This document shows positions 2,145 through 63,586 of a stretch of DNA of 64,000 nucleotides, one piece after another. Both the position numbers and the translations under genes were made by a program. The first letter of the stretch is position 1. Every line of letters begins with the position of its first letter. The stretch lies in the IMG/VR virus record IMGVR_UViG_3300042319_002138, positions 1 to 64,000 of that record, one strand, 5' to 3'. The notes under the pieces are model-generated. The model did not search any database. It was not told the origin of the DNA and saw only the letters and a list, made by a program, of their open reading frames with translations.

Positions 2145-2197
2145 AATAATTATTATGCTATTGGTTTAGTGTGATATTTATAAATAAAAACAAAAAA

Positions 2198-5100
2198 ATG
2201 GGAAAATTAATTTTAAAAAAAGGTGGCGTTGAGACGCAATATATTAATGGTGTTGACTTTACTACAATAACGCCACAAAATGGTGTTTACTCTGTTGGTG
2301 TTGACCTTGTTACTGGTTATTTTGAAAAACTAAACCCTGACGGTACAATCATAAACTTTGACCAAGATATTACAGGTAGTACAAATACTTATGGTGTAAC
2401 TTATTCAGGATTGGTAAATCATATTACGAGTGGTACATTAGATTCAGGTTCTTTTTATCTAATCACAGATTTTAAAACTTGTTATGACCAGCCTGATTTT
2501 GATTATAACAATAATCCTATTACAAGTGGTAATTACAAACAAGGTCCTGTTGAGCCTATTTTAGTTTTAGCTACTAGTGCAAACACAATCAGTGAGATAG
2601 CTTATCAACCAGCTTATCCTAAAGATAGAATATTATATGATTGGACATTTAATCAAACGGAGGTTACTAGTGGTGTTACTTTTGGTAGAATTACTGAAAG
2701 AATCGATGAGTTCAATAACAGAACTGATTATGACCATAGAAATATTTTATTTAAAAGATATAGATTATTTACTCAAAGAGAAGGTTTAAGAATAAATGGT
2801 ACAATCGAATTACTTAGTGGTGGTACTGTGAATGGTATTGATACATCTTTTACTGGTTTAACTATTGGTGATGTTATTTATATCCCTAATGCTGACCCTA
2901 GTTATTACGAGATTGTAAGTATTTCTGGTGACACATTAATGTCAGTTTCAGGTGATACAATAGGTTCAGTAGGTCTAGGTACAGTAATTTACAAAACAAT
3001 AGAAGAAACTAATGATAGTAATGGTTATTTTAGCTTTAAAAGAACAAATGTTAAAACATCTGATTTTATTGAATACACAACATTTGGAGATGCTCTTAAT
3101 CAAGAATACGCAAAAAATAATTATGTAGGTAATTACGCTAATAACTATACAAATTTAGGTTCTGGAACTTTTATATTAGCAAATAATGTATTATTAGAAG
3201 GACAATATGAAAGTAATAAATTTGGTGATTATTGTTATAACAACACATTTGGAACCGACAATCAAAATAACGTTTGGGGGGATTGGTGTTATGAAAACGT
3301 ATCAGTAAACGATATTGATGATTGTATTATAGGTCATTATTTTAATCGTAACTTAATAAATGCAAATTTATACTCTAACCATATTGGTAATGATTTTAAT
3401 AATAACCGATTATTGAATGAGAATGGTACTGATTTTGAAGACAACATTATTGGTAATGGTTTTAGTAACAATCTTATTTATTCTGGGTTTTATAAAAATG
3501 AAATATTAGATAATTTTAACGATAATGTAATTGGTGACTTCGGTAACTTAGATAATTTTGAATTTTATAGAAATTATATTCGTAATAATTTTAACGAAAA
3601 TATCATAAGACAAAATTTCCAAAACAATCAAATTGGTACAAACTACCAAGAGAATACTATTAATGGCGATTCTCAAGGTAACACAATACTTAATGGGTTT
3701 AATAATAATCAAATTGGTAGTTATTTTAATCACAATCTTATTGGTAATGGTTTTAATAATAATACAGTTAATGATAGTTTTTATAATAATGAAACTAAAA
3801 ATTATTTTAATGGTAATATTATTAGTAATGAATTTTTTACCAACGATATAGGTACAAACTTTTATAATAACAACCCATCTAATTTAGATTTATTTGGGTG
3901 GAACGACTTATCAACAGTATCAACAAGAACATATGATACTTTTTATAATTCACTTAATGGTGATTTTGGGAAAATTTTAGGTAAAGAACTTGTGATGGAG
4001 GTTACATCAACATCACAATATTTCAAGATTAAATTTACACAATGGTCAACTAACGACAATGGATTTCAATACACAAGAGAAGAAATTGATTCTTCTGGTA
4101 ATAGTTTAGGTCCTGTTATAGCATTCACTTTAGTTAATGGTGGAACTGACGTGGATTACATTGTTCCAGGTGATGTAGAAATAACAAGAAGTGGTACTGA
4201 CCCTATTTATAATTCTTTTGCTGAACCTGGTTGGGATAGTTCAGTTTCACCAAGTGGTACATCATGGAACTCTATATATACTGAGCCTAATAATGGTGAA
4301 AGATTCGCATATAATAAAATAGGAAATGAGTTTCAAAATAACACAATAGGAAATGATTTTGGTTTCGGAGGTAGTGACGACCATGGTAATGTAATAAACG
4401 ATGTGTTTGAAAATAATACTATTGGACAATTTATGTACGATAATGTTATAGGTAATTACTTTACCAACAATATTATCGGTGATAACTTTGAGACTAACTC
4501 AATAAAAAATAACTTCGAAAATAATACTATAGGTAATACATTTACAGGTAACGATATTGAAAATTTCTTTGTTGGAAATACAGTAGTTGATGGTTTTGAA
4601 GGTAATGAAATAGGTAACTACTTTGGGAATGATGGTTCGGGTCCTGGTTCACCAGTTCAAAATATTATTTTTGATGATTTTAAATACAATAAGATTGGTA
4701 ATTTCTTTGGTAATGACACTAACTACCCTACTGTTGGTGGTGGTTCAAATGGGGATGGTGGAAACATCATAAACACTGGATTCCAATTTAACGTGATTGG
4801 TGATAATGTAATATTTAACGCACTAAACTTAAACTTCACCAATAATAAAATTGGAAACGTCTTTTGGTTTAACGTTTTTGGGTCAAACAACAACAATAAT
4901 ACAATAGGGAATTTATTTGTCGGTAACTCAGGTATTGGTGGACTCCCAATTGAAATTGGTGATAACTTTATATCTAATAATTTGGGTAACTACTCAGCGT
5001 TTAACGAAATTGGTACTGATTTCCAATATAACAAGGTTGGTCATTTCTTTGGTAACGCTGGTAGTGGAACACAAAACATTATTTCTAATGGATTTAACAA

Positions 5101-6280: not shown

Positions 6281-6317
6281 AAAGAATCCCCCAATCACTT
6301 GGGGGATTTTCTTTTTT
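6281..6317. terminator. Bidirectional intrinsic terminator
   Basis: aatcccccaa-tcac-ttgggggatt hairpin with A/T flanks, between convergent genes. Confidence 0.8.
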
Positions 6318-8799
6318 AGGACTTACTTTCAGTACCACTGATTATTTCAACAGTAACGTCATTTTTAGCATAACCAATTTTAATGGTATCCCCTTCTTTG
6401 ACATCACCCTCCATCATTCTTTCAGCGATAGGGTCTTCAACGTACTTTTGGATTGCTCTGTTAAGAGGTCTAGCTCCATACTTCTCATCGTAACCAATTT
6501 CAACTAAATGGTCTCTCATTTTTGTAGAAATCTTGATGTTGTAACCCATTTCAGCCATTCTATCTCTTAAATCGTTAAGAGGTAACTCAACAATATTCTT
6601 GATATCTTCTTTTCCTAAAGATTGGAAGATGATGATATCATCAAGACGGTTCAAAAATTCAGGTGAAAAAGCTTTCTTAACTGACTCTTCGATTACGTTG
6701 TTACGGATATCTTCCAAGTTTTCAATTTTAGCTTTTGTACCAAAACCAACACCTGTACCAAAATCCTGTAGTTTTCTAGCCCCTACGTTAGATGTCATGA
6801 TAATTAAAGTATTCTTAAAGTCTACTTTTCTACCAAGACCATCCGTTAAGTGACCCTCATCCAATACTTGGAGTAGGATGTTGAATACATCAGGGTGTGC
6901 CTTCTCAATCTCATCTAACAAGATAACTGAATAAGGTTTTCTTCTAACTTTCTCAGTCAACTGACCACCTTCTTCATAACCAACATACCCTGGAGGAGCT
7001 CCCACTAATTTAGAGATTGCGTGTTTTTCCATGTATTCAGACATATCCACTCTAATCATAGAATCTGCAGTACCAAACATTTCTTTGGCCAACATTTTAG
7101 CTAAGTGAGTTTTACCTACACCAGTTGGTCCTAAGAAAATAAATGAACCGATTGGTTTTCCTTGTTGTTTAATCCCCATTCTATTTCTACGAATAGCTTT
7201 TGAGATTTGCTCAACAGCAGAATCTTGACCGATTACCTTACTTGTTATTTCTTTGGACATGTTTTTGAGTCTTATCAACTCGTCCTGACCAACCTTAGTC
7301 ACAGGAATACCTGTAATCAATGAAACAACTTTAGCAACATCTTCTTCAGTAATTTCTTTTCTTTCTGAATTGAGATTACTAGTCCAAACGCTTGTCTCTA
7401 TATCCAAACTTTCTTTTAGTTTTCTTTCTTCATCACGAAGACGTGCAGCTTCTTCATATCTTTGAGCTTTAACCACATCAATTTTAGCCTTATCGATATC
7501 AACAATCTTGTTCTCTAAGTCTAAAATAACTTGTGGTGGTTTTGCGTGAACTTGTGACCTAGCACCTACCTCATCCATGATATCGATAGCTTTATCAGGT
7601 TGTTCACGGTCACTGATATATCTATCAGCTAATTTAACACAAGCTTCAATTGCCTCATCAGTATATCTTACTTTGTGGTGGTCCTCATACTTATCCTTAA
7701 TGTTTTTAAGAATAATTAATGTTTCCTCAGAAGATGGTGGTTCAACCATTACAGTTTGGAATCTTCTAGTTAATGCACCGTCTTTCTCAAAGTTTTCACG
7801 ATACTCATCAAGAGTTGTTGCCCCAATACATTGAATTTCACCACGTGCTAAAGCTGGCTTCAAGATGTTTGATGCGTCAAGAGAACCAGAAGCGTTACCA
7901 GCACCAACCATAGTATGGATTTCATCAATGAAAAGAATAACGTCATCAACCTTTTCCAATTCTTGCATAATACCTTTTAAACGTTCCTCAAATTGGCCAC
8001 GGTATTTAGTACCTGCAACTAATAGAGCCATGTCAAGGGATACTACTCTCGTATTGAACAAAATTCTAGGACATTTTTTCTGAACAATTTTTAGAGCTAA
8101 CCCTTCTACAATCGCTGTTTTACCAACACCTGGTTCACCAATCAAGATTGGGTTGTTTTTCTTTCTTCTACTCAATACCTGAGCAACTCTTTCAACTTCA
8201 TCGTCTCTACCAATAATTGGGTCAATCCCACCTTTTGCAGCAATATCGGTAATATCTCTACCAAAATTATCCAGAATAGGTGTGTTGGATTTAGTACTGC
8301 CCTTCTTACCTTTTAAACCATCCATTTCATCGTAATCGTCTGTAATTCCACTCATGTTAATTTGTTTTTTTATTTCTATTAATCTTTGTTTAAAACTTTT
8401 ATAATCAAGACCCTGATGTTCCAAAACTTTAGTACAATCAAGTTCTCTATTTTTTAAAATTGCTAACATTAGGTGTTCTTCCCCAATGTGTTTATCCCCT
8501 AATTTATCTGATTCCAGTTCTGCTATGTTTAAGACAGATTTAGAACTTTTACTCAAAGGTAGTAATTTTATTTCATATTTCGGGTTTTTAATTTTTAATC
8601 TTATGTAAGATTCGACTTTTGAAGTTAATTCGTCAACATCTAAACCCATATTTCTTATAACATCAGTAACACTATTGTTGTTATCAAAAAAAAGAGCTAA
8701 AACTATATGGTCTGGACTAATATCACTCCCACCTAATCTAACGGACTCTCTAAATGATTCCTGTATTATTAATCTAATTTTTTCTCCTATGGGTTTCAT
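6316..8799 (-). CDS. clpC: ATP-dependent Clp protease ATP-binding subunit ClpC
   Basis: Clp N repeats, two AAA+ modules ([16 protein letters not shown]; IDEIH, LDEIEK), UVR middle domain ([11 protein letters not shown]), VGF ClpP-docking loop (GVGFG), YGARPL. Confidence 0.93.
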
Positions 8800-8925: not shown

Positions 8926-9141
8926 ATGTATAAAGAATTAACAATTATTTTTAAAAATAACCCCAATAGTGATGATGATTTTGATGGGGGTACACATTCA
9001 GTAACCTACGAAAAGGCAGCTTTTCAATTAGTAGGTGATTATATGGTATTACATTTACAAAAAGAAGATGATGCTGGAAATGGTTATGTAGAAGGCCACA
9101 TATTACCAATAAATTCAATTAAATCTTATAAAGGGGTTTAA
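8926..9141 (+). CDS. Hypothetical protein
   Basis: 71-aa ORF; upstream TTGACT-N17-TAAAGT at 8844-8872. Confidence 0.6.
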   Translation: MYKELTIIFKNNPNSDDDFDGGTHSVTYEKAAFQLVGDYMVLHLQKEDDAGNGYVEGHILPINSIKSYKGV

Positions 9142-9142
9142 T

Positions 9143-9442
9143 ATGGCGGTAGTAAAAAAAATAGAAAAAGAAGATGGTGTTGTTGAGTGTTTAATTGACT
9201 CATCAAACATTATAATGTCTGAATACGACGAAACTAAAAGTACTTTAGCTATTACATTTAAAGCGGGTACAAAATACCTTTATAAAGAAGTTTTAAAAAG
9301 GGATTATGTTCGTTTTGAAGTTTCTGAAAGCCAAGGAGAAGTTTTTAATAAAACTTTACGTAAATATGTATACGAAAAATTAGATAATATAGACGTTTCT
9401 CCTTTAAAAGAACAAATTAAGGAAATAAAAGGTATTGTTTAA
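9143..9442 (+). CDS. KTSC domain protein
   Basis: SSNI..EYD....L.ITFK.G..YLY..V....Y..F..SESQG..FN pattern. Confidence 0.8.
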   Translation: MAVVKKIEKEDGVVECLIDSSNIIMSEYDETKSTLAITFKAGTKYLYKEVLKRDYVRFEVSESQGEVFNKTLRKYVYEKLDNIDVSPLKEQIKEIKGIV

Positions 9443-9771
9443 TTTTTTGTGTAAGATACTACATCTACAATATCCATACATGGAGGGTTAACATCTGACT
9501 TACTTTTCGCAATAAAAACAAAAACAGGTCCTTCAGTGTAAACAATATATTTAAGTTCATCTGATATACCACCGTAACCTAAAAATTTAATTGTAATCTC
9601 TTCAAACCCTAGTTCGGATAATTTTCTTGATACTAGGGTTTTTACACTTTCCCCCGTACAATCAATGGAACTTAAAATATTTACAATTTCATTTGCAGTA
9701 TATTCCTGAATTCTTATTTCAGTTAATCTTTGTAACTGTGATTCTGTTAGTATAATATTTTTTCTTCTCAT
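9439..9771 (-). CDS. Hypothetical protein with IILTESQL leader
   Basis: Start reassigned to ATG 9771 (MRRKNIILTESQLQRL), just after the upstream gene's stop. Confidence 0.65.
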   Translation of the reverse strand: MRRKNIILTESQLQRLTEIRIQEYTANEIVNILSSIDCTGESVKTLVSRKLSELGFEEITIKFLGYGGISDELKYIVYTEGPVFVFIAKSKSDVNPPCMDIVDVVSYTKN

Positions 9772-9775
9772 ATTA

Positions 9776-10357
9776 TTAATTTTCATTGTAGTCTTCATCA
9801 TAATCTTCATCATAGTCAGAAGGGTCAAATCCAGATTCTCTTCTTTCAAAATCTTCTACATCTAACCCAGCTTCATAAGCTCTACCTTCTTCAAAGGCTT
9901 TATAATAAGTTGCTTCAACCCCCTCTTCGTAACCTTTTTGATATCCGTCTTGGATAGCTTCGTCATAACCTTCGTCATAACCTTTCTCGTATTTTTCTTC
10001 TAACTTATCTTCCATATCCCGTTTAGCTTCAGAATATCCATCACGATGACCCATATCATACCCTTGGGATTCACCTTCACTATAACCATTTTGACTCCCT
10101 GTATCTATACCCCTTTCATAAGCATTATAACCAAATTCATATAATGATTTAATTAAACTATCTAATTGTATAGTGTTTAAACCAAGATTATAAATAGAAT
10201 TAACTAAAGGACTAGTTTCGGTATTAAAAATATAAAAACCAAAATCATCAAATCTAGATAGTTTATTAGCTATTTCAGATTTTGAGGTTGGTTCAGATTC
10301 CCTAACCCAATCAAAATCGTTGTCTTCTTTTAATATTTTCTTAATTGTATTTCTCAT
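9776..10357 (-). CDS. Hypothetical protein with GYxxG repeats and KKILKE..DFDW leader
   Basis: Yae1/FliH-like GYxxG repeats; preceded by ATATTTAT on the minus strand. Confidence 0.65.
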   Translation of the reverse strand: MRNTIKKILKEDNDFDWVRESEPTSKSEIANKLSRFDDFGFYIFNTETSPLVNSIYNLGLNTIQLDSLIKSLYEFGYNAYERGIDTGSQNGYSEGESQGYDMGHRDGYSEAKRDMEDKLEEKYEKGYDEGYDEAIQDGYQKGYEEGVEATYYKAFEEGRAYEAGLDVEDFERRESGFDPSDYDEDYDEDYNEN

Positions 10358-10366
10358 TATCATTTA

Positions 10367-10386
10367 ATAAATATCATGATATTTAT
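10367..10386. promoter_or_regulatory. Back-to-back ATATTTAT putative late promoters (perfect 20-bp palindrome)
   Basis: ataaatatca|tgatatttat between divergent genes, one motif facing each gene. Confidence 0.65.
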
Positions 10387-10390
10387 GAAT

Positions 10391-11608
10391 ATGAATATAA
10401 ATGAAAAAGAAGTCGAAAAAGCTAATAGAAAAATTGACTTGGGTGGTTTTACAATGAATGATGAATTAAATCCTAAAATTTGGGATGAAAATCAAAAAAT
10501 GAAACCCGAAGTTAAAAAAAATCTTTTAAAAATAGCTGATGATTATTTTGAGAGTTTAAAAATACCTGGGGTTGACATTGAAGATGTTTGTATTACAGGT
10601 AGTTTGGCTAATTATAATTGGTCAAAATACTCTGACGTTGATTTACATATTATAATCGATTATAAAGATGTCCCTGTTGATGAAGATTTAGTACAAGATT
10701 TTTTTAAATCTAAAAGCTCTAATTGGAATAAGGAACATGACGTTAAAATTTATGATTATGACGTTGAATTATATGTACAAGATATAAATGAATCACACCA
10801 CTCAACAGGAGTTTATTCAATATTAAATAATGAATGGGTAACAAAACCACAAAACAAGAAAATTAATTTTAACGATAAATCTGTAAAAGATAAGGCTAAC
10901 GGAATTATGGACCGTATTGAAGATTTATATGATGAGTTAAATGATGGTGATTATGATGTTGCTGTTAAAGGTGTTGAAAAATTAACGGAAAAAATTAAAA
11001 AAATGCGTCAATCAGGTTTAGAGTCTGGTGGTGAATTTTCAGTAGAAAATATTGTTTTCAAAGTTTTACGTAGAAATGGAATGTTGGATAGATTGTATGA
11101 TATTAAGACAGTTGCTTACGATAAATCGGTAACACTAGAATCAATGCGTGAGTCAAAAAAAATTGATTCCCTTTTAGAATCAATTGAAGATGACCCATTT
11201 AAATGGATAAAAGATGTAGAAACAAAAACATTAATAGAAAAACAACCATATAGAAGTGCTGAATATGATATAGTTGGTGAATATTTTAAAAAAGAAAAAC
11301 CCGTTTATAAGGGTTGGTCTGTTATTTGGGACGGTTTTCAAGGAGTTGTTGAATGGAGAAATCAAGATGTACCACATTTATTTATTTTTGCAACACCTTA
11401 TTGGGATGGTGCTGATAATGTACCAGTAAATTATGATGAAAATTACGGTGATGATTACGGACATTTAGGATTTGTAAGTATTCCTGAATTTGAGTATAAA
11501 GAAGACTTAATCAATTGGATAGAAAACGATTATTTTAAAGGGGTGTATAAATTAATTATAGATTATACGGGCCCTTTAGTCGAATCAGTAGAAGATTTTA
11601 AACGGTAA
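10391..11608 (+). CDS. Pol-beta superfamily nucleotidyltransferase with C-terminal extra domain
   Basis: GS..NY....SDVDLH motif plus later VELY; start is 10385 or 10391. Confidence 0.75.
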   Translation: MNINEKEVEKANRKIDLGGFTMNDELNPKIWDENQKMKPEVKKNLLKIADDYFESLKIPGVDIEDVCITGSLANYNWSKYSDVDLHIIIDYKDVPVDEDLVQDFFKSKSSNWNKEHDVKIYDYDVELYVQDINESHHSTGVYSILNNEWVTKPQNKKINFNDKSVKDKANGIMDRIEDLYDELNDGDYDVAVKGVEKLTEKIKKMRQSGLESGGEFSVENIVFKVLRRNGMLDRLYDIKTVAYDKSVTLESMRESKKIDSLLESIEDDPFKWIKDVETKTLIEKQPYRSAEYDIVGEYFKKEKPVYKGWSVIWDGFQGVVEWRNQDVPHLFIFATPYWDGADNVPVNYDENYGDDYGHLGFVSIPEFEYKEDLINWIENDYFKGVYKLIIDYTGPLVESVEDFKR

Positions 11609-11656
11609 TTGGTGGTTTATTGAAGATTAAACATATTTATATAGAAAAAGAAAATT

Positions 11657-11944
11657 ATGGATAGTTATTATGCATTACACTTACCTTCGGGAGCTACATA
11701 TACAGCATACACGTATTATCAAATATATGTTAACGCTGGAGCTACTTTAGTATATAAAGGTGTTACATTACCCTCACCTTCGGCTGGACCTATAGTATTA
11801 AATCTAACTGTTAATTCTACTACAGATATAGCTGGTAGTTCGGGAATTGCTTTATTAGGTAAGAAAAAACCAGAAGCTTTTGCAGAAGGACCTGCTGGAC
11901 AAAACGGTCTTAACACGGATGGTACTTGGAATATAAGAGGATAA
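11657..11944 (+). CDS. Hypothetical (probable virion) protein
   Basis: 95-aa ORF after the motif at 11633. Confidence 0.6.
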   Translation: MDSYYALHLPSGATYTAYTYYQIYVNAGATLVYKGVTLPSPSAGPIVLNLTVNSTTDIAGSSGIALLGKKKPEAFAEGPAGQNGLNTDGTWNIRG

Positions 11945-11957
11945 AAAAAAATAGAAG

Positions 11958-14234
11958 ATGAATAAAAAATTATTAAATAGAATGTTGGAACTCTCTAACA
12001 TTAAACCAGTGATTAAAGAAGAAAAGATGAGTCTATCTAATTTTGAATTGGTTAAAGAATCTGTAAACGGTAAAATATATGCTGTTGTAAGAGAACAAAA
12101 TAAATATTATATAAAGAACGCTGATTCTAAAAATAATATCAATGAATCTGATTTTGATTACATTGGTGGTATAGTTAATAAGGGAAAAAAATCTTTTTAT
12201 TCTTATGAAGAGGCGGTTAAACATTTAAATTTAATGTTTGAAGAAATTAATAATCACTATAATGTAGATAATGTTAATTTGTTAGAATCAGATGTTTTAA
12301 ATGAGAAAAAATTTATTTTAAAATTAAAAAACAAAAAAACTGAACCAAAAGCTGAACCAAAAGTTGATAAAGGTGGTTTTGACTTTGGTGGAGACTCTGA
12401 AGAAAAGGAAACTTCTGATAAAGGTGGTTTTGACTTTGGTGGAGGTGATGATACTGAAGATACGGGGGATAGTGAATTTGACTTCGGTGGAGATGAAGAT
12501 ACTGAAGATACTGGTGATGATTCATTTGACTTCGGTGATGATACTGAAGATACAGGAGACGGTGAATTTGATTTTGGTGGAGACGATGAGGGAGTTGATT
12601 CCGAAGAAGACGATACTGATGTAGAAGAATTTGGTGATGATGATATCAAAGATATTCAAAGTACCACAGGTAAATTGGGTCAACAAATTAGAGATGTCGA
12701 GGATTTATCTTCTGATATGCAAAAATGGGTTGCTAAATCAGTTTTATCTGCTATGGATTTAGAAAATATGGATTCTGAAGATAAAAAAGATATTATTCGT
12801 ACAATAAAAAAGAAATCACAAGAAGAACCTGAAGAATCTGATGAAGAGTCTTTTGATTTTGGTGATGAGGAACCTGTAGAGGAATCTTCTTATATGTCTT
12901 ATATGGACGATAAATCATGTACACATTGTAATGGTTCGGGTTATGATGAATTCACTGATGAAACTTGTGAATGGTGTGAGGGTGAAGGAAAATTTATAAA
13001 TCCTAATGACACAAGTAATTATCGTAGATATATGGGTGATGGTACACACGATTCTTACATGAAAGAGAAAAAAGAAAGTTATTCAGATTCAGAATTAGAT
13101 AATTGGTTGCTGGATATGGAAATGGCTGGATTTGTTTCAACACCTTCTTACGAATCATACATGGGAGAAGACAACCCTCATATTGGTGGTGATGAGAATA
13201 TGGTTGATGGTGAATTATTATTAGATTATGATGATGAAAATTTATATGGTTTAAACCTAAATATGAGAAATAATCCTAATTTAGAGTATTCAGAAAATAA
13301 TAACATGAATCGTGGATATGGTAATTATATGTCTGATGTAACAGATAAATTTGAGACATATGAACAAGAAATTGCTTACCAAGATTTGTCGGATATGGCA
13401 TCGGAATATGGTTTTACACTAAGTCTTTGTCACGCTGATAAAACAGAAGACCCTGAAGAATCTACAATCTATTTTGATATCAAAGACGGTAGTAAAAAAT
13501 TATTAAAGGCTAGAATTAACTCTATTGGTAGTCTTGAAATTGGTACAATGAGAGGTAGACATTTTATTGGTGAACCAGTTGACTCTTTATCAGATTTTGA
13601 CGAAACTTTTGACGAAGAAGGAAAATTAAAAGATATGGGACCCCAAAGAGAAAAAGCACCTGAAAAACCTGACCGTGGAACTGAAACAATTCCCGGAACA
13701 CCTACTAAAACACCTGATAGAGAACGTCCTTCTAGAAGACCGTTTAATCCTCCCCCACATATTACGCCAGGTGAGGAACCAGGTCCAAAAGCTAGAGGTA
13801 GAAGATTAAATAATTATGACCCTACAATGGCTCCGGCTCCAGCAAAACAACCTGAAAAACCTGACCGTGGAACTGAGACAGTTCCTGGAACGCCGACTAA
13901 AACGCCTGATAAGGATAGACCATCTAGAAGGCCTTTTAATCCACCTCCTCACATTACGCCAGGAGAAGAACCAGGTCCAAAAGCTAGAGGTAGAAGAAGT
14001 TATATGAGTTATATGGGGGATGAAGATAAAACATCTAAGCCATCTCATGACAAACCTCGAAGACCTGGCCGTAATCCATTTGAAAAACCTATGGGGGATG
14101 AAGATAAAACATCTAAGCCATCTCATCCCAAACCTCGAAGACCTGGCCGTAATCCATTTGAAAAACCTCAAAGACCTGACAGTAATCCATTCAAAAGGCC
14201 TAATAATAATGAAGGTGACGTTAAGTTCTCATAA
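11958..14234 (+). CDS. Large acidic low-complexity protein (probable internal head protein) with DnaJ-type Zn finger
   Basis: FDFGG repeats, two CxxCxGxG, YM[SG]D repeats, Pro/Arg C-terminal repeats. Confidence 0.6.
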   Translation: MNKKLLNRMLELSNIKPVIKEEKMSLSNFELVKESVNGKIYAVVREQNKYYIKNADSKNNINESDFDYIGGIVNKGKKSFYSYEEAVKHLNLMFEEINNHYNVDNVNLLESDVLNEKKFILKLKNKKTEPKAEPKVDKGGFDFGGDSEEKETSDKGGFDFGGGDDTEDTGDSEFDFGGDEDTEDTGDDSFDFGDDTEDTGDGEFDFGGDDEGVDSEEDDTDVEEFGDDDIKDIQSTTGKLGQQIRDVEDLSSDMQKWVAKSVLSAMDLENMDSEDKKDIIRTIKKKSQEEPEESDEESFDFGDEEPVEESSYMSYMDDKSCTHCNGSGYDEFTDETCEWCEGEGKFINPNDTSNYRRYMGDGTHDSYMKEKKESYSDSELDNWLLDMEMAGFVSTPSYESYMGEDNPHIGGDENMVDGELLLDYDDENLYGLNLNMRNNPNLEYSENNNMNRGYGNYMSDVTDKFETYEQEIAYQDLSDMASEYGFTLSLCHADKTEDPEESTIYFDIKDGSKKLLKARINSIGSLEIGTMRGRHFIGEPVDSLSDFDETFDEEGKLKDMGPQREKAPEKPDRGTETIPGTPTKTPDRERPSRRPFNPPPHITPGEEPGPKARGRRLNNYDPTMAPAPAKQPEKPDRGTETVPGTPTKTPDKDRPSRRPFNPPPHITPGEEPGPKARGRRSYMSYMGDEDKTSKPSHDKPRRPGRNPFEKPMGDEDKTSKPSHPKPRRPGRNPFEKPQRPDSNPFKRPNNNEGDVKFS
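13659..13997 (+). repeat. Imperfect ~147-bp intragenic duplication (13659-13805 / 13851-13997)
   Basis: Encodes PEKPDRGTET.PGTPTKTPD..RPSRRPFNPPPHITPGEEPGPKARGRR twice, with mostly synonymous differences. Confidence 0.9.
14013..14168 (+). repeat. 78-bp near-perfect tandem duplication
   Basis: MGDEDKTSKPSH.KPRRPGRNPFEKP x2, differing at one codon. Confidence 0.9.
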
Positions 14235-14251
14235 ATAAGAAATAAAATAAT

Positions 14252-14284
14252 AAAAAACATAGTCTAAAAAGGCTATGTTTTTTT
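14252..14284 (+). terminator. Intrinsic terminator
   Basis: aaaaaacatagtc-taaaaa-ggctatgttttttt. Confidence 0.75.
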
Positions 14285-14310
14285 ATGCTCAAGACTAATA
14301 TTTATAGTAT

Positions 14311-16658: not shown

Positions 16659-16662
16659 AGAG

Positions 16663-16732
16663 AACGGATTAGGACCGTTATAGTCTACGGACTATTAAAA
16701 CCCACCAAGTTCGCTACTATGGTGGGTTTTTT
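16663..16732 (+). other. Triple-hairpin structured element ending in a terminator-like stem
   Basis: aacgg/ccgtt, atagtc-tacg-gactat, aaaacccacca/tggtgggtttt followed by T-run. Confidence 0.55.
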
Positions 16733-16755
16733 CATGCCTGATGATATTTATTGGC

Positions 16756-18594: not shown

Positions 18595-18598
18595 TATT

Positions 18599-18835: not shown

Positions 18836-18918
18836 GTTTAATACGAATAACATTCACATTAATAAAGTGTCGGTTAACTTTATTAATAATATTTATAATA
18901 TAAAAAACATTTTTTTAA

Positions 18919-20823: not shown

Positions 20824-20849
20824 AGCATATTTATTTTAAAAATAAAATT

Positions 20850-22197: not shown

Positions 22198-22226
22198 AAT
22201 TTAATATTATTATTAAAAAATATGAT

Positions 22227-23813: not shown

Positions 23814-23842
23814 AAAGGAGGGGTAGTAACCCCTCTTTTTTT
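23812..23842 (+). terminator. Intrinsic terminator
   Basis: gaggggt-agta-acccctc followed by T-run. Confidence 0.75.
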
Positions 23843-23886
23843 GCTCCAAAGATTAATATAGCATATTTATAAGAAAAAGTATAAAT

Positions 23887-26305: not shown

Positions 26306-26443
26306 ACAATAATAAATATCAATTGTTTTTAAATAATCTTTTTAAAAAAATCAATCTTTTCCACATTTAATACATATTTATTTGAGAAACTAGCGTTTTA
26401 AAGCGCTATTTTTTCATAATAACAGTTTAAAAAAACAAAAAAA

Positions 26444-29603: not shown

Positions 29604-29646
29604 GTATTATTTACAATAATATATTTTATGGGTATATTTATATTAT

Positions 29647-30345
29647 ATGGGAAAAAAGAAAATTGAAATACCTGAAGATGTTTTATCAGAAATGATAAGA
29701 TTATATAATGAAGACTATATTGGTACACCTTCATTATCTGATAGATTTGGTTATCATAAATCTATTATTTTAAGAAGTTTTAAAGATAAAGGTGTACAAC
29801 TAGGTCCATCTGGCCGTAAATGGACTGGTGGTAAAGAAGAGGCAGCTAAAAAATATCACTCTAAACCTGAAGTTAAAAAAAGAAAAAGTGATAACCACAA
29901 AATATGGTCAGAAAAAAACCGTGAACATCTACGAGAATACCACACCAAATGGAGAGAAGAAAATCGTGAAGACTTAAATGAGTACAAACGTATCTACGAA
30001 AAAACAAAAAAAGATTCCGACCCATCATATCGATTGGCATGTTATACAAGAACAGCTGTTTACACTTGTTTAAAAGAAAGAGATGTAACAAAATATAAAA
30101 GTACTTTTGATTTATTACCTTATTCTTTGGAGGAATTAATCACCCATTTGGAATCCCAATTTAAAGAAGATATGACATGGGATAACTATGGTGAGTGGCA
30201 TGTTGACCATATTAAACCTATGACTTCATTTAATATCCAATCACCTGAAGATAAATCTTTTCAAGAGTGTTGGTCGTTAAATAATTTACAACCTCTATGG
30301 GGTGTGGAAAATCTTTCCAAAGGTTCAAGATATTTATTAATATGA
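29647..30345 (+). CDS. Free-standing HNH (homing) endonuclease
   Basis: WHVDHIKP...NLQPLW..ENLSK, basic helical N-terminal region. Confidence 0.8.
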   Translation: MGKKKIEIPEDVLSEMIRLYNEDYIGTPSLSDRFGYHKSIILRSFKDKGVQLGPSGRKWTGGKEEAAKKYHSKPEVKKRKSDNHKIWSEKNREHLREYHTKWREENREDLNEYKRIYEKTKKDSDPSYRLACYTRTAVYTCLKERDVTKYKSTFDLLPYSLEELITHLESQFKEDMTWDNYGEWHVDHIKPMTSFNIQSPEDKSFQECWSLNNLQPLWGVENLSKGSRYLLI

Positions 30346-31492: not shown

Positions 31493-31557
31493 ATTTACGT
31501 TTTTCTTAGGGACAACACATATTTATATATAAATAATATTTTTTAAAAAATAAAAAA

Positions 31558-34176: not shown

Positions 34177-34208
34177 CAAATATAAGTATCTTTTTTTAAT
34201 CAATCAAA
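34177..34208 (-). promoter_or_regulatory. Bacteroidota sigma-A consensus promoter (-33/-7)
   Basis: Minus strand TTTG-N20-TATATTTG, exact match to TTTG...TAnnTTTG. Confidence 0.7.
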
Positions 34209-34261
34209 GGGTAAACCTAAAATTTTTCTTTTTTCTGGGATATTTATATAAAAACATTAAA

Positions 34262-36620: not shown

Positions 36621-36663
36621 TAGTTTTTATTTACTAATAAATATCTAAAAAAAAGATATAATT

Positions 36664-40584: not shown

Positions 40585-40619
40585 AATCTTTTTTTTATAA
40601 ATATCCTTTTTATATAATT

Positions 40620-41402
40620 TTAAAAAGAATCATCTCTTAAAACATTGTAAATGACCCTATATCTTTTCATGCCATTTCTAATGTCTTTAGTATTAAGAGA
40701 TGTCATTTCTCTCATATAATATAAAATAAGGTTTTTATTGAATTTATTTTTACCAGGAACATTATCATCATCAAAAAGATTTTCCCATTCATCTAAAATA
40801 GAAGTTAGGGCCTTACCGACTTTAATTTCATTTTCGTTTAAAACTTTATTTTCCATTTCTTTTTTAATGCTAGTAGAAATGCTTCCGATTAAATCACCCA
40901 AATTTGGTTTTGGGTCATCGATATAATAAGCCATGTTTTCGTCCTCCTCAATCATAGGAGCAACGTCATCGTAACTTAAATTTTGTTTAAGTCTTTTATC
41001 CCCCTTTATCATTTGACCTAAGAGGTAGTGTTTACACACAGTCCCATAATAAGAGTAAGATTTTTTATTTCTTGACGGCTTAAATTTATGAAACTTAATG
41101 TGTAAAAAACTAAGTGTATCGGCATGAAGGTCATCAAACTCCATTGTTTTAGAATAGAGTTTGTACCTTCTAATAATGCTTTCAACCATTTTATCTAACG
41201 GGGCCTTGAGCTGTTTACTGTAGATTCTATTTCTAAGTGTGTCTTCTTCCGTTGTGCCAGTCCATCTATACCCGTCTTGTGTAGTCGGGTCTTTAATTAA
41301 TTCTCCAAGTTCAAGATAATTCTTTACTGCTTCTTCTTCTTCCGGACCAAAGTAAGGTTTCTTTTTAGGTTTCCTACCCCTTTTCTTTGGTTCTTCTATC
41401 AT
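40620..41402 (-). CDS. Late-transcription sigma factor (T4 gp55-like)
   Basis: Region-2-like KFKPSRNKKSYSYYGTVCKHYL, compare gp55-type F.P.K....FAYFT; no obvious region 4. Confidence 0.6.
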   Translation of the reverse strand: MIEEPKKRGRKPKKKPYFGPEEEEAVKNYLELGELIKDPTTQDGYRWTGTTEEDTLRNRIYSKQLKAPLDKMVESIIRRYKLYSKTMEFDDLHADTLSFLHIKFHKFKPSRNKKSYSYYGTVCKHYLLGQMIKGDKRLKQNLSYDDVAPMIEEDENMAYYIDDPKPNLGDLIGSISTSIKKEMENKVLNENEIKVGKALTSILDEWENLFDDDNVPGKNKFNKNLILYYMREMTSLNTKDIRNGMKRYRVIYNVLRDDSF

Positions 41403-60511: not shown

Positions 60512-60579
60512 AAATTACTTTCTATATAAATATCAGGTAATTATTATAATTCTACTTTATTTTTTCTTATTTTAAGGGT

Positions 60580-63480
60580 TTAATCAACTAAGGCTATGTT
60601 TTTAGAATCTAAATTTTCTTTTTTATCGGATAATCTATCATTAACCATATAATCGGGTGAAATACCTTTTTTCTGCCAAAACTTTAATTCATCATCACTC
60701 ATTGTCATAAGTTCTTCTAAACTATCTTGGTCTCCAGGTTCAGATGGTATGCCCGATACTAATCCCAACTCACTTCTAGTAAAAAATTGTTTATCAGCCG
60801 GGTCAGTTATCAATAAACTTTCTCTAATATGTAAATTAAAAACTACCAATAAAGGTTCTACTTTTTTATTAAAAGAATCTATATATTTTGGGACATTATA
60901 ATTTCCTTTCATATTTGGATTTTTTTCCATTTCGTCAGAAGTAATCAAATAAGAGTTAAAAACTAAAGTACCTTCAGGTGGGTCATTTTTAGTTTTTTTA
61001 ACTTGGATGTCTCCATGTGATTTTTTTGTACCGTTATTAACATAGTAAACTTGGTCCCCCAATTGAGGTTCAATTCCTTCTTTAATTAAAAGTTCCATGT
61101 GAGCTTGTCTAGGTAAATCAGCTCCATTTTTATTTGAACCTCTATTCTTATATTGTTTAAAAGTTTTTTTAACTTTTGATTTATTAGCAATATCGGCTAA
61201 AGGAATATCCATATTATAAATCTTTTCAAGGTATTCATTATAATAATCTACAAAAGATTTTCCATCACCATTTAATAACATTTTAATACCATTGTTCAAA
61301 AATGTTTTAATATATTTTTGAATCATTTTACCTTTAATAGTATTACCTGTTAATTTAATTTTACCATTTGGTTTAAGAGTGGCATAATTTTTACGTGATA
61401 AATTAATTGTTGCCGGCCATACCTCATCAATATCAAGACCCATAGCTTCATACATATAACGGTCATTATATTCCATTACATCAGCATCAATACCTTTATA
61501 TTCTTTCCCCTCCTCAACAAATCTATGGAGACCTTTACCAATGTAAGTATGTGATAATACTTTATCATCATAAGAAAAGTTTACACCATCAGTATCTAAT
61601 ACCAAAGGGTCGTAACCTCTTTCCATAAAAAATTTAATCATGTGTCTTAGGTATTGTCTACCTGTACAAGTAATAGTTTCACCAATATCAATATCACCCC
61701 AAGGAAAAATATAAGGTGCTGAAATAGAACCAAAAGCAGAGTTATTGAAAATTTTAATCGGTAATTGTTTTTTATCAAATTTACCGGCTAATTTGTCATC
61801 ACCCTCAGCTCTATATTTGTTCATTAAATTTTTATATAAATTACGAGTATCAGACAAGTATTTTATCATTGCTTTTAAAGCACCAGATACATCTACATCA
61901 GGAAAAACATTATGTGTTAATTGGATTGATGGGTAAAGTGAAGCGTAGTCAAATTTAGCAATATTCTTACTATACCCCAAGTTTAATAATCTAGATAACC
62001 CCCCAACAAAATCTCTTTTTGGTGATACGTCTGGTAAAGCTAAATTATTTTCATAAGACCATGCCATCATTAAAGTTTTCCACATTGTTGCGGTACCCAT
62101 TGTAATTGAACGAACAAAGTTAGTCGGAACTAAAGCTGCGGTTAAGAATCCTGCTTGTGCATAAATGTCATCAACTTGTTCAGTTTCCCAAAGGTCATCA
62201 TGAAGATATTCTTTAATTAAAAATTGACCGTCAACTATATTCCAAGTGTCTTCATAGGCATCAATAATTTCACCTTCAATTTCTTTCGGGTTTGGTTTAT
62301 TTCCGTCTAATGAATACCACTGACCACTAGTCGGGTTATAATGATATTTTTTATTTTCTTTCCAAATCTTACCTAATTGAGCTCCATCAATATAAACACG
62401 GTTGGGTCTTTCGATATTAGCCTCCTTAGCAATATATTTCAAACCACCTTCTTGTAAATTTGAATTTAAAGCCATCGCCTGTCTAACTCTGTGGTAAGTG
62501 TCCATCACATTATAACCCCATAGTTGGGTTTGTTCATATTCCTCAGTTTCAGCACCCAATTTTAAACTAGCTTTTTTTCTAGATGCTTTAATCATTGGAT
62601 GTTTTGTTTTAATAATGTCGTCAGTATTTAAACCTAAAAGTTGAGCACGTCCAGGAATTAATGTTTTCTTAACTTCAATCTTTCTTGTTTTTGGGTGTGT
62701 GTATTTTTGTTCTTCTGTTCTGCCTATAAGGTAAGTCCAGTCAAAGTTTTCTGAGTTGTAACCAATAATAACTGTTGGTTCTAGTTCATGTATAATTTCA
62801 AAAAATTCTTTTAACATTTTTTTTTCACCCTCTTTAGTATACTCACCGTCATTGTCGTAAGCAGTTAAAAGTTTTTGGAACCCACGATTATCTTTAATCC
62901 CAATCATAAAAGCATGCCCTTCTGCTGGGTCAAGACTTGTGGTCTCAATATCGAATGTTAATTTGTGAACTTCTGTGTAATCCTCATAACCTTTAAATAA
63001 TCTTTTACCTGTTTGAATCATGAATTGTTCTACAGGGGGTAAAATTTGTATTAATCTTTTATCTCTATCCCAAGGATTGATTCCACCTTTTTTAAAGAAA
63101 TTAATTAGGTCACGGTAAGTACCTGTTGTTTTAACCAAAAAACTAAAACCATCTTCAAGTCTTTCGTTATCATCAGTATTTAATTTTTGTGTACTTATAC
63201 CATATTTTTTGGCCTCACGTCTAATGACATCTAGGTCATCACCGTAAAAACCACTTCCTCTTAATGATTTGGTCCAACAAAAAGGTGTAAATTTTTGGAC
63301 TTTAATTTTTTTACCCTTATTAGGGTCATCGATAATTAAATAAACTTTGTTGGTTTCGTCAATTGACCAATCGTCTGTTTGGTCTAATTCAATTGAGACA
63401 ATATATTTTTCAGGGTCATGTCCTTCTAAAAATAATTTAATGTCTTCAGGGGTTGCCTGTTTGATTTTTTCTTTTTTCAT
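60580..63480 (-). CDS. polB: DNA polymerase family B
   Basis: FDIETT (ExoI), YNSENFD, DYASLYPS, KIFNNSAFG, LDTDG. Confidence 0.93.
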   Translation of the reverse strand: MKKEKIKQATPEDIKLFLEGHDPEKYIVSIELDQTDDWSIDETNKVYLIIDDPNKGKKIKVQKFTPFCWTKSLRGSGFYGDDLDVIRREAKKYGISTQKLNTDDNERLEDGFSFLVKTTGTYRDLINFFKKGGINPWDRDKRLIQILPPVEQFMIQTGKRLFKGYEDYTEVHKLTFDIETTSLDPAEGHAFMIGIKDNRGFQKLLTAYDNDGEYTKEGEKKMLKEFFEIIHELEPTVIIGYNSENFDWTYLIGRTEEQKYTHPKTRKIEVKKTLIPGRAQLLGLNTDDIIKTKHPMIKASRKKASLKLGAETEEYEQTQLWGYNVMDTYHRVRQAMALNSNLQEGGLKYIAKEANIERPNRVYIDGAQLGKIWKENKKYHYNPTSGQWYSLDGNKPNPKEIEGEIIDAYEDTWNIVDGQFLIKEYLHDDLWETEQVDDIYAQAGFLTAALVPTNFVRSITMGTATMWKTLMMAWSYENNLALPDVSPKRDFVGGLSRLLNLGYSKNIAKFDYASLYPSIQLTHNVFPDVDVSGALKAMIKYLSDTRNLYKNLMNKYRAEGDDKLAGKFDKKQLPIKIFNNSAFGSISAPYIFPWGDIDIGETITCTGRQYLRHMIKFFMERGYDPLVLDTDGVNFSYDDKVLSHTYIGKGLHRFVEEGKEYKGIDADVMEYNDRYMYEAMGLDIDEVWPATINLSRKNYATLKPNGKIKLTGNTIKGKMIQKYIKTFLNNGIKMLLNGDGKSFVDYYNEYLEKIYNMDIPLADIANKSKVKKTFKQYKNRGSNKNGADLPRQAHMELLIKEGIEPQLGDQVYYVNNGTKKSHGDIQVKKTKNDPPEGTLVFNSYLITSDEMEKNPNMKGNYNVPKYIDSFNKKVEPLLVVFNLHIRESLLITDPADKQFFTRSELGLVSGIPSEPGDQDSLEELMTMSDDELKFWQKKGISPDYMVNDRLSDKKENLDSKNIALVD

Positions 63481-63586
63481 AAACTTTTTTGATTTTTGGT
63501 ACGGGGTAAATCTTAACCTCTCGTTATTTTATTAATTATACTACATTTATAAATAAAAACAAATATATTTATGATAAAAATAAGTT

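What the first reader, a model, noticed from the sequence alone, without database searches (positions are those of the whole stretch)
2174..63572. Directional ATATTTAT motif: putative late promoter, often giving leaderless mRNA
Seen: the motif lies in sense orientation shortly upstream of most structural or leader-bearing genes. Plus strand: 2174, 10379, 11633, 14298, 16744, 18889, 20827, 23863, 26374, 29634, 30330, 31519, 34240, 63565. Minus strand: 10367, 26312, 36637, 40597, 60526. I did not find it in sense orientation before clpC, GS, the glycan genes or polB. In five cases the ATG is only 4-5 nt downstream. It approximates the reverse complement of the T4 late box TATAAATA and resembles the Bacteroidota -7 box (TAnnTTTG). 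Inference: it is read by the gp55-like sigma at 40620. Caveat: the 8-mer is common by chance in AT-rich DNA, so position and orientation are the evidence, not count.
Basis: partly seen in the sequence, partly recalled or inferred. Interest (0 to 1): 0.6.

Follow-up and report, generated by a model that had tools for sequence, protein, structure and literature searches.

The report
Late-gene promoter box of a jumbo phage
The 8-base word ATATTTAT is very probably the core of the late-gene promoters of a large T4-like phage of Bacteroidota. It works like the T4 late promoter but has a different box, is conserved across a big clade of aquatic phages, and is probably read by a very divergent phage sigma factor.

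Summary
All 19 listed sites exist. Raw count is only modestly high (28 vs 17.6±4.2), but position and strand are decisive. Across the whole 226-kb record, 50 of 99 copies lie in sense just upstream of ORF starts, a zone covering 3.1% of positions (p≈5e-48). In co-directional intergenic regions the split is 39 sense to 2 antisense.

ATATTTAT is the top de novo upstream 8-mer here, in a complete 380-kb relative, and near the top in the cultured Flavobacterium phage immuto. All 8 positions are strict and there is no -35/-33 partner. Downstream genes are terminase, portal, prohead protease, scaffold/major capsid, endonuclease VII, sheath, tube and baseplate.

Box-to-ATG distance is bimodal (4-7 and 12-18 nt), with A enriched 5-7 nt after the box. 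That places the box near -13 to -6 and predicts about 30% leaderless mRNAs.

A second class (TTTG-N19-21-TAnnTTTG, the Bacteroidota sigma-A type) precedes non-structural genes. ORF 40620-41402 is a real but very divergent sigma: it has a region-2 fold and weak gp55-profile links. That it reads the box is inferred; immuto keeps this protein and the box but has no detectable sigma-70 region 2. No transcription start data exist. Verdict: a new variant of the T4 late-promoter principle.

The parts
2174..2181 (+). L box; 16 nt before ATG 2198, the likely true start of the 1092-aa ORF called from GTG 2171
10367..10374 (-). L box; 3 nt before ATG 10363 (gene 9776-10363, whose product starts with the shared leader peptide). 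Back to back with 10379+
10379..10386 (+). L box; 4 nt before the in-frame ATG 10391 (gene to 11608); predicted leaderless
11633..11640 (+). L box; 16 nt before ATG 11657, at the head of the 11657-14234 unit
14298..14305 (+). L box; 5 nt before ATG 14311 and just after a hairpin with a T-run; predicted leaderless
16744..16751 (+). L box; 4 nt before the in-frame ATG 16756 of the terminase large subunit, after a hairpin with a T-run; predicted leaderless
18889..18896 (+). L box; 22 nt before the portal gene (18919-20823). Conserved before the portal gene of nearly all of about 60 relatives
20827..20834 (+). L box; 15 nt before ATG 20850
23818..23835 (.). G+C-rich hairpin with a T-run (terminator-like) 28 nt upstream of L box 23863. 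An example of the terminator-then-promoter layout
23863..23870 (+). L box; 16 nt before the prohead protease gene (23887-24654)
26312..26319 (-). L box; 6 nt before ATG 26305 (gene 25877-26305)
26374..26381 (+). L box; 62 nt before ATG 26444 (scaffold-like gene, then major capsid 27752-29551). The predicted leader contains hairpin 26391-26408
   Evidence: RNA-library contigs cover 26450-29600 only
29634..29641 (+). L box; 5 nt before the endonuclease VII-like gene (29647-30345), after a hairpin with a T-run; predicted leaderless
30330..30337 (+). L box inside the end of the endonuclease VII gene; 4 nt before ATG 30342 of a gene whose product starts with the shared leader peptide
31519..31526 (+). 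L box; 31 nt before ATG 31558
34240..34247 (+). L box; 14 nt before ATG 34262
36637..36644 (-). L box; 16 nt before ATG 36620 (gene 35118-36620)
40597..40604 (-). L box; 12 nt before ATG 40584. It heads the minus-strand unit 40584 down to 35118, directly downstream of the sigma-like gene
60526..60533 (-). L box; 14 nt before ATG 60511
63565..63572 (+). L box; 14 nt before ATG 63587
40620..41402 (-). Candidate late sigma (260 aa): a sigma region-2-like N-terminal domain (about residues 20-140) plus a conserved C-terminal helical domain (about 165-256)
34177..34208 (-). Example of the second promoter class (E): TTTG, 20-nt spacer, TATATTTG, 34 nt before gene 33402-34142. This is the host sigma-A type and is not part of the L class

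Best explanation
ATATTTAT (the 'L box', usually followed by an A-rich stretch) is the core, -10-region-only element of this phage's late promoters.

Proposed mechanism:
1. Host core RNA polymerase carries a phage-encoded, highly divergent sigma: ORF 40620-41402, which has a sigma region-2 domain distantly related to T4 gp55.
2. This holoenzyme recognises the strict 8-bp box lying at about -13 to -6.
3. Transcription starts at an A 5-6 nt downstream of the box.
4. About 30% of units are then leaderless, because the ATG sits 4-6 nt after the box. The rest carry short A-rich leaders without a Shine-Dalgarno sequence, as is usual in Bacteroidota.

Non-structural genes, presumably early, instead use host-type sigma-A promoters (TTTG-N19-21-TAnnTTTG).

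What is shown: the sequence statistics, the conservation across relatives, the gene classes downstream, and the sigma-like nature of the ORF. What is inferred: promoter activity, late timing, the exact start site, and which sigma reads the box.
For: Position and strand:
- 50 of 99 copies lie in sense-upstream zones (3.1% of positions), p=4.8e-48. Co-directional intergenic regions hold 39 sense vs 2 antisense copies.
- It is the top de novo upstream 8-mer in G000: 49 genes vs 2.7 expected.

Positive control: the same script run on T4 recovers TATAAATA as the top 8-mer (20 genes vs 1.5 expected), and ATATTTAT is not enriched there.

Strictness: the exact word gives 123 sense-upstream / 18 antisense / 139 elsewhere in G000 plus G002. 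Every single-base variant sits at background (1-13% sense-upstream) except ATATTTGT, which belongs to class E.

No -35/-33 partner: there is only a weak T-run 14-16 nt upstream of the box. A is enriched at the 5th to 7th nt after the box (95-103 of 142 sites).

Spacing: box-to-ATG distance is bimodal, 4-7 and 12-18 nt. Class-E boxes, whose position is known from Flavobacterium start-site maps (-12 to -5; PMC9723704), also often sit exactly 4 nt from an ATG.

Layout: several boxes directly follow hairpin-plus-T-run terminators.

Downstream genes: terminase large subunit, portal, prohead protease, scaffold-like/major capsid, endonuclease VII, sheath, tube, baseplate wedge. Class-E genes are a phosphoesterase, an Fpg/Nei-type glycosylase, a cREC_REC protein, the operons holding the sigma-70 gene and a weakly primase-like gene, and small unknowns.

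Conservation:
- The box is kept before the portal gene in nearly all of about 60 relatives (67-100% portal identity), while flanks and spacing vary.
- It is the top 8-mer in a complete 380-kb relative: 88 genes vs 5.7 expected.
- In the cultured Flavobacterium phage immuto it precedes the terminase/head operon, tail spike, tail fibre and virion protein genes.

Sigma candidate:
- Pfam Sigma70_r2 at E=0.008 on the ORF; 25 of 68 diverse family members hit Sigma70_r2 (best 4e-7).
- Fold search: the model of residues 20-147 matches sigma-2 domains of CnrH, SigW, SigE and AlgU (Z 6.2-7.0) and T4 gp55 (7d7d_F, Z 5.9).
- The family profile aligns to gp55 residues 42-123, its region 2, at E=4.7e-4.
- Its orthologues are the only gp55-profile (phrog_234) hits in two near-complete relatives.
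- The family has 4532 word-search hits and 1220 representatives at 50% identity.
- Immuto has a homologue of this protein and the L box, but no Sigma70_r2 match at E<=1.
Against: - No transcription start sites or time course exist. The only RNA data were assembled metatranscriptome contigs, which cover 26450-29600 and cannot show 5' ends.
- The ORF itself gets no gp55-profile hit, no Pfam hit above threshold and no PDB sequence hit. Structural Z scores of 7 or less are in the range the tool warns can arise from common helical arrangements.
- hhalign probability against T4 gp55 is only 32%.
- A second, full sigma-70-family gene exists in this phage and its close relatives.
- No T4-type clamp was found in G000 or in a 100%-complete relative; gp33 was not searched for. 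The T4 activation scheme is therefore unsupported.
- Gene models are my own simple ORF calls, so some distances may be off by an alternative start codon.
Confidence: 0.62

Rival explanations
1. The box is read by the host primary sigma (sigma-A) as a deviant -7 element. A phage-made appropriator or activator, in the manner of T4 MotA/AsiA, would make up for the missing -33 element and final G.
For: - If one base to the left is included, the box overlaps the TAnnTTT part of the host -7 consensus.
- In immuto, the early promoters use TTG-N18-19-tATATTTAG, which shares ATATTTA with the L box.
- Both classes sit at the same distance from leaderless ATGs.
- Some genes carry E and L boxes in tandem (G000 159334/159349, 83994/84022).
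Against: - The L box has no -33 element.
- The base before the box is not T-biased, and the 8th position T is required: variants ending in G, C or A show no enrichment.
- The two classes precede different kinds of genes.
- Flavobacterium sigma-A motifs all keep TAnnTTTG (PMC9723704).
- No MotA/AsiA-like factor was looked for or found.
Confidence: 0.15
2. The box is read by the phage's own full-length sigma-70-family protein (G000 160497-161312; regions 1.2, 2 and 4). That gene is expressed early from class-E promoters.
For: - It is a clear sigma-70 family member: Pfam region 2 at 5.5e-16, region 4 at 3.3e-16 and region 1.2 at 2.4e-12, and PDB SigA at E=1e-58.
- It is conserved in close relatives.
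- It lies behind class-E boxes, which fits an early-made factor that switches the programme.
Against: - Immuto has the L box before structural genes but no Sigma70_r2 match at all.
- A sigma with region 4 is expected to use an upstream element, which L promoters lack.
- Its length (271 aa) and domain set resemble a short primary sigma, so it may instead serve class-E-like promoters. That is inference.
Confidence: 0.1
3. The motif is not a promoter. It would act on RNA or in translation instead, as a processing site, a translation enhancer for mRNAs lacking a Shine-Dalgarno sequence, or an intergenic repeat without function.
For: - It lies very near start codons.
- Bacteroidota translation relies on A/U-rich upstream sequence (PMC6847099, abstract only).
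- The downstream A-rich stretch is part of the conserved context.
Against: - Distance to the ATG ranges from 3 to more than 60 nt in two modes, rather than at a fixed spacing.
- In many cases the box would lie upstream of any RNA that begins at the ATG.
- It follows terminators.
- It is restricted to one functional class of genes.
- It is an A/T-only strict 8-mer with the same geometry as the T4 late box (PMC2988020).
Confidence: 0.05

Closest known systems
T4 late promoters (TATAAATA) read by gp55 with gp33 and the gp45 sliding clamp
   Same: - An 8-bp, A/T-only, strictly conserved box in the -10 region with no -35 element, placed before virion, packaging and endonuclease VII genes of a phage with T4-type portal, capsid and terminase genes.
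- A phage protein with a sigma region-2 domain is present.
- The same de novo pipeline recovers both boxes (PMC2988020).
   Different: - The box is ATATTTAT. With its preferred following A it is the reverse complement of the T4 box: TATTTATA vs TATAAATA, 6 of 8 positions identical in the same orientation.
- The T4 box itself is not independently enriched in sense orientation.
- About 30% of units are predicted leaderless. In T4 every box-to-ATG distance in the histogram, which covers boxes within 80 nt of a called start, was 13 nt or more.
- The candidate sigma is 260 aa, with an extra conserved C-terminal domain, and is barely detectable as a gp55 relative.
- No gp45-type clamp was found.
Bacteroidota primary-sigma promoters (-33 TTTG / -7 TAnnTTTG)
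   Same: - Same host phylum is inferred.
- Same position relative to the start site (box at about -12 to -5; PMC9723704).
- A/T-rich with a TTT core.
- Followed by leaders without a Shine-Dalgarno sequence.
   Different: - No -33 element, no final G, and the first T is not conserved. All 8 positions including the final AT are needed.
- The phage carries a separate class that does match this consensus, before non-structural genes.
Extended -10 and other -10-only promoters of bacteria
   Same: Recognition is confined to the region where the DNA opens, without any sigma-4 / -35 contact.
   Different: - No TGn motif directly upstream of the box.
- The only upstream signal is a weak T-run about 13 nt away.

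Membership tests
T4-type late promoter | Strict 8-bp A/T-only box in the -10 region | tested here: met
   The exact 8-mer is 44% sense-upstream. Single-base variants are at 1-13%. Spacing to leaderless ATGs and the A enrichment 5-7 nt downstream place the box near -13 to -6.
T4-type late promoter | Box sequence is TATAAATA | tested here: not met
   The box is ATATTTAT. Sense-oriented TATAAATA that does not overlap an L box occurs before only 8 (G000), 5 (G002) and 5 (immuto) genes. In T4 the same test gives TATAAATA as the top 8-mer.
T4-type late promoter | No -35 element | tested here: met
   Logos of 56 and 142 sites show no informative upstream block apart from a weak T-run 14-16 nt upstream of the box.
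T4-type late promoter | Precedes late (virion, packaging) genes | tested here: met
   Downstream genes are terminase large subunit, portal, protease, scaffold-like/major capsid, endonuclease VII, sheath, tube and baseplate wedge. In immuto they are the terminase operon, tail spike, tail fibre and a virion protein. Timing itself was not measured.
T4-type late promoter | Activated through gp33 and the gp45 sliding clamp | tested here: inconclusive
   The gp45 profile phrog_223 finds nothing in G000 or in the 100%-complete G002, and only a spurious 33-residue hit in G001. gp33 was not searched for. A divergent clamp cannot be excluded.
T4-type late promoter | Transcription starts mapped downstream of the box, late in infection | not testable with these tools
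   Only assembled metatranscriptome contigs were available.
Bacteroidota sigma-A promoter | -7 box TAnnTTTG | tested here: not met
   The final G is absent and the preceding base is not T-biased. ATATTTAG and ATATTTAC are not enriched.
Bacteroidota sigma-A promoter | -33 TTTG placed 19-21 nt upstream | tested here: not met
   It is absent from the L logos but present in the separate class E.
gp55 family (for ORF 40620-41402) | Significant match to a gp55 profile | tested here: inconclusive
   phrog_234 gives no hit on G000. It hits the 63-65% identical orthologues in G002 and G001 at E=3.4e-4 and 0.016. hhalign of the family against T4 gp55 gives E=4.7e-4 at 32% probability, over gp55 residues 42-123.
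gp55 family (for ORF 40620-41402) | Sigma region-2 fold | tested here: met
   Model residues 20-147 match sigma-2 domains at Z 5.8-7.0, including gp55 chain 7d7d_F at Z 5.9. 25 of 68 family members hit Pfam Sigma70_r2. The Z values are moderate.
gp55 family (for ORF 40620-41402) | Single-domain protein of about 185 aa ending in a clamp-binding tail | tested here: not met
   The protein is 260 aa and has a conserved, confidently folded C-terminal helical domain (pLDDT 82). That domain resembles sigma region 4 only weakly: 2h27_D Z 5.4 and 6ono_B Z 4.9, which do not stand above unrelated hits. A clamp-binding motif was not tested.

The most novel reading that the evidence does not exclude
A large, environmentally abundant clade of T4-like phages of Bacteroidota runs its late programme with a box that mirrors the T4 late box. 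The box would be read by a two-domain late sigma: a gp55-like region 2 fused to a C-terminal domain like sigma region 4 or gp33. This would work without a T4-type sliding clamp. Such a protein would be a natural example of the 'fused late sigma' that the T4 literature notes has not been found (PMC2988020). About a third of late mRNAs would be leaderless, in a phylum where leaderless mRNAs are rare (5.5% in F. psychrophilum; PMC9723704).
Probability: 0.2. Interest if true: 0.75.

Novelty: new variant of a known kind. Interest (0 to 1): 0.55.

Why it matters
- The box gives a simple, testable rule for annotating late transcription units and true start codons in a very abundant group of aquatic jumbo phages that remains mostly uncultured. 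The sigma-like protein family alone has over 4500 word-search hits and 1220 clusters at 50% identity.
- It separates early from late genes by sequence alone.
- It identifies a cultured proxy, Flavobacterium phage immuto on Flavobacterium sp. LMO8, in which the promoter and its sigma can be tested.
- It would show how the T4 late-transcription principle was re-tuned for a host phylum whose own promoters and translation signals are unusual.
- The strict 8-mer and its sigma could become an orthogonal expression switch for Bacteroidota genetics.

Tried and rejected
- Megablast of 20 kb against the GenBank phage collection found nothing.
- T4 gp55 and gp45 proteins, and the PHROG profiles of gp55 (phrog_234, phrog_12791) and gp45 (phrog_223), found nothing in G000.
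- Pfam and PHROG scans of ORF 40620 gave no hit at the default thresholds. phmmer and a family-profile hmmsearch against PDB sequences were empty.
- Foldseek against the PDB gave no significant hit for the whole model or the C-terminal domain. For the whole model, several of the top non-significant rows were sigma factors or TFIIB-type chains.
- The search for RNA evidence returned only Logan contigs of three metatranscriptomes. These show the scaffold/capsid genes in RNA libraries (26450-29600) but cannot show starts, strand or level.
- I looked for a third class around GTATAAT, seen before the glutamine synthetase gene and polB. The genome-wide positions show no clear upstream bias, so I dropped it.
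- E. coli-type TTGACA/TATAAT promoters are depleted relative to shuffles.
- I considered that the true element is TATAAATA on the opposite strand. I rejected this because orientation follows the downstream gene 39 to 2 and the spacing to the ATG is fixed in the sense direction.
- Literature searches for the motif, for gp55 in Bacteroidetes phages and for immuto found no description of this promoter. The library is incomplete, so this is not proof of novelty.
Full report
**Context.** The window is the first 64 kb of a 226,303-bp IMG/VR virus record (G000). The record is linear, CheckV estimates it about 70% complete, and it is 30.8% G+C. It encodes a T4-type portal (18919-20823), a Gp23-type major capsid protein (27752-29551), a family-B DNA polymerase (60580-63480), ClpC-like (6316-8799) and glutamine synthetase-like (22297-23376) proteins, a terminase large subunit (16756-18594), a prohead protease (23887-24654) and an endonuclease VII-like protein (29647-30345). 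Further along the record lie tail sheath, tail tube and baseplate wedge genes. There is no close DNA match in the GenBank phage collection. Dozens of IMG/VR contigs carry portals 67-100% identical, including records of 318 kb (96% complete) and 380 kb (100% complete).

**The observation.** All 19 coordinates are exact matches. Position and strand are not weak:
- With my own simple gene model, 17 of the 28 fall in the zone from -45 to +12 of an ORF start on the same strand (p=1.5e-18).
- Across the record, 50 of 99 copies fall in such zones (3.1% of strand positions; p=4.8e-48), against 7 antisense.
- In intergenic regions between co-directional genes there are 39 sense and 2 antisense copies (p=8e-10).
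- Intergenic DNA holds 59 copies, where a third-order Markov model of that same DNA gives 13.6±3.6.
- Among all 256 A/T-only 8-mers, ATATTTAT ranks first.
- In an unbiased count of all 8-mers in the 50 nt before ORF starts it is also first: 49 genes vs 2.7 expected.
- As a positive control, the identical script run on phage T4 returns TATAAATA, the known late box, as the top word (20 genes vs 1.5 expected). It does not return ATATTTAT.

**Anatomy.**
- The box is strict. In G000 plus the 380-kb relative, the exact word is sense-upstream in 123 of 280 cases. Every single-base variant is at background except ATATTTGT, which belongs to the other promoter class.
- Logos of 56 and 142 sites show no -35 or -33 block. 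There is only a weak T-run 14-16 nt upstream of the box and a preference for A at the 5th to 7th bases after it.
- Box-to-ATG distance is bimodal, with modes at 4-7 nt and 12-18 nt. There are few cases in between in G000 and in the portal-neighbourhood loci; the trough is shallower in G002.
- In the window, seven boxes lie 3-6 nt from an ATG (10367-, 10379+, 14298+, 16744+, 26312-, 29634+, 30330+). For 10379, 16744 and 30330 this picks an in-frame ATG slightly downstream of the longest ORF start.
- Several boxes sit just after G+C-rich hairpins followed by T-runs (14298, 16744, 23863, 29634). Terminator-like sites are enriched in the region, 16 vs 7.0±2.9.
- Three divergent gene pairs share back-to-back boxes in a palindrome (10367/10379, and G000 90210/90216 and 164366/164370).

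**A second class gives the frame of reference.** The next most striking upstream word is TATATTTG. Twenty-eight intergenic sites fit TAnnTTTG, and many have TTTG or TTG 19-21 nt upstream. This is the promoter architecture of the Bacteroidota primary sigma. In Flavobacterium psychrophilum start-site maps the box lies at -12 to -5 (PMC9723704).

These class-E sites precede a phosphoesterase, an Fpg/Nei-type glycosylase, a cREC_REC protein, the operons holding a weakly primase-like gene and a sigma-70-family gene, and many small unknown genes. Eight of the 28 sit 4-6 nt from an ATG, six of them at exactly 4 nt. Given the known geometry, 4 nt puts +1 on the A of the ATG. The L boxes show the same behaviour at 4-5 nt, so the L box most likely occupies about -13 to -6 (or -12 to -5).

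That predicts roughly 30% leaderless units in both classes, against 5.5% reported for the host-type bacterium (PMC9723704). Class E also points to a Bacteroidota host. This is an inference, supported by the kinship to a Flavobacterium phage described below.

**Gene classes.** Every L-box gene that could be named is a virion, packaging or endonuclease VII gene. Many others are unknown. Several unknowns share an N-terminal peptide of the form M-x-x-I-(R/K)-K-I-L-K-E. It resembles T4-type capsid-targeting propeptides that end in L-x-E. That comparison rests on my own knowledge and is untested. No L box precedes clpC, glutamine synthetase, the glycosyltransferase gene or polB. 'Late' is thus inferred from function, not measured.

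**Conservation.**
- Before the portal gene, nearly all of about 60 relatives keep the exact 8-mer, while the flanks differ and the distance to the ATG ranges from 4-5 to about 44 nt. Rare variants change one base.
- In the neighbourhoods of those portals, 159 of 270 distinct copies lie within 60 nt upstream of an ORF, with the same two distance modes.
- In the complete 380-kb relative it is again the top 8-mer (88 of 435 genes vs 5.7 expected), with TATATTTG again enriched.
- In the cultured Flavobacterium phage vB_FspM_immuto (160 kb, host Flavobacterium sp. LMO8) ATATTTAT is enriched (19 genes vs 1.3 expected, 1 antisense). It stands before the terminase/portal/protease/capsid operon and before tail spike, tail fibre and virion protein genes.
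- In immuto, a cluster of small genes at 60-76 kb instead carries a repeated TTG-N18-19-tATATTTAG promoter-like element.

**Who reads it.** ORF 40620-41402 (260 aa) gets no hit at the default thresholds in Pfam, PHROGs or PDB sequences. The evidence that it is nonetheless a sigma is:
1. A genome-wide scan with Pfam Sigma70_r2 picks it at E=0.008.
2. Its family is huge and well conserved: 4532 word-search hits and 1220 representatives at 50% identity.
3. 25 of 68 diverse members match Sigma70_r2, the best at 4e-7. None matches a region-4 model.
4. An AlphaFold model (pLDDT 67.5) has residues 20-147 aligning to sigma-2 domains of ECF sigmas (Z 6.2-7.0) and to T4 gp55, chain 7d7d_F (Z 5.9).
5. 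The family profile aligns to gp55 residues 42-123, exactly its region-2 segment (PMC2988020), at E=4.7e-4 but only 32% probability.
6. In two near-complete relatives the only hits of the gp55 profile are the orthologues of this ORF.

So it is a sigma-like protein, remotely gp55-like. It also has an extra C-terminal domain (pLDDT 82) whose likeness to sigma region 4 is weak and does not stand out from unrelated hits.

A second candidate exists: a full sigma-70-family protein at G000 160497-161312, conserved in close relatives. Immuto, however, has the L box and a 25%-identical homologue of ORF 40620 but no Sigma70_r2 match at all. The argument is correlative, not proof.

No gp45-type clamp was detected, so T4-style clamp activation is not supported.

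**Comparison with known systems.** It works like the T4 late promoter: an 8-bp, A/T-only, -10-only box before late genes, with a region-2-type phage sigma. It fails membership on the box sequence, and probably on the accessory factors. With its preferred following A, the box is the exact reverse complement of the T4 box (TATTTATA vs TATAAATA). The T4 word in sense orientation is not independently enriched. It is not a Bacteroidota sigma-A promoter either, because there is no -33 element and no final G, and a separate class fills that role. I found no description of this box in the searchable literature, which is incomplete.

**Limits.**
- No start-site or timing data exist. The RNA evidence was assembled contigs only, covering the scaffold and capsid genes (26450-29600) and nothing else in 26001-32000 apart from a trace near 31500.
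- The gene model is a home-made ORF caller.
- The structural matches are moderate.

**Verdict.** The reading as a late promoter is well supported in silico. The leaderless inference is plausible. The assignment to the sigma at 40620 is the best available hypothesis but is unproven. Overall this is a new variant of a known kind.

Noticed in passing
window 10363(-), 30342(+); G000 171523, 184627, 210298, 217534(-), 220952, 222315: Many predicted leaderless L-box genes encode proteins that begin with a shared peptide, M-x(2-4)-I-(R/K)-K-I-L-K-E-(E/S), often followed by DFDW. It resembles a T4-type capsid-targeting propeptide ending in an L-x-E protease site, so these may be proteins packaged in the head.
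   Followed up: partly
G000 160497-161312 (outside the window; locus L002 1351-2166): A full sigma-70-family gene (regions 1.2, 2 and 4; 271 aa) lies next to a SIR2-family gene and behind host-type class-E promoters. It is conserved in close relatives, and the 380-kb relative has two copies. Its target promoters are unknown.
   Followed up: partly
window 34177-34208(-); G000 91302(-), 159848, 160065, 188446, 200229, 200943, 208073, 217572, 224170 and others: A second promoter class, TTTG-N19-21-TAnnTTTG (the Bacteroidota sigma-A type), precedes non-structural genes. It often sits exactly 4 nt from the ATG, which also predicts leaderless mRNAs. It implies a Bacteroidota host.
   Followed up: partly
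window 26391-26408(+): A hairpin followed by a T-run lies inside the predicted 62-nt leader of the scaffold/major-capsid operon, 10 nt after L box 26374. It could be a 5' stabilising stem-loop or an attenuator.
   Followed up: no
window 10367-10386; G000 90210-90223 and 164366-164377: Palindromic back-to-back L boxes serve divergent gene pairs from intergenic regions of only about 12-80 nt.
   Followed up: partly
Flavobacterium phage immuto NC_055915, about 60-76 kb: More than 15 copies of a long repeated promoter-like element (TTG, 18-19 nt, tATATTTAGgtatcaataattaaaaca) stand before small genes. The element shares ATATTTA with the late box.
   Followed up: partly
G000 206221-206593 (locus L091 2221-2593): A cluster of tRNA-Leu(taa), tRNA-Glu(ttc) and tRNA-Arg(tct) genes.
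   Followed up: no
window 22260-22290 and 63530-63550(-): The glutamine synthetase and polB genes share an upstream word TAGTATAATTAA (TATAAT-like). Genome-wide, GTATAAT shows no clear upstream bias, so its meaning is open.
   Followed up: partly
window 9000-28900: E. coli-type TTGACA/TATAAT promoter matches are fewer than in shuffles (63 vs 91.7±9.3).
   Followed up: no
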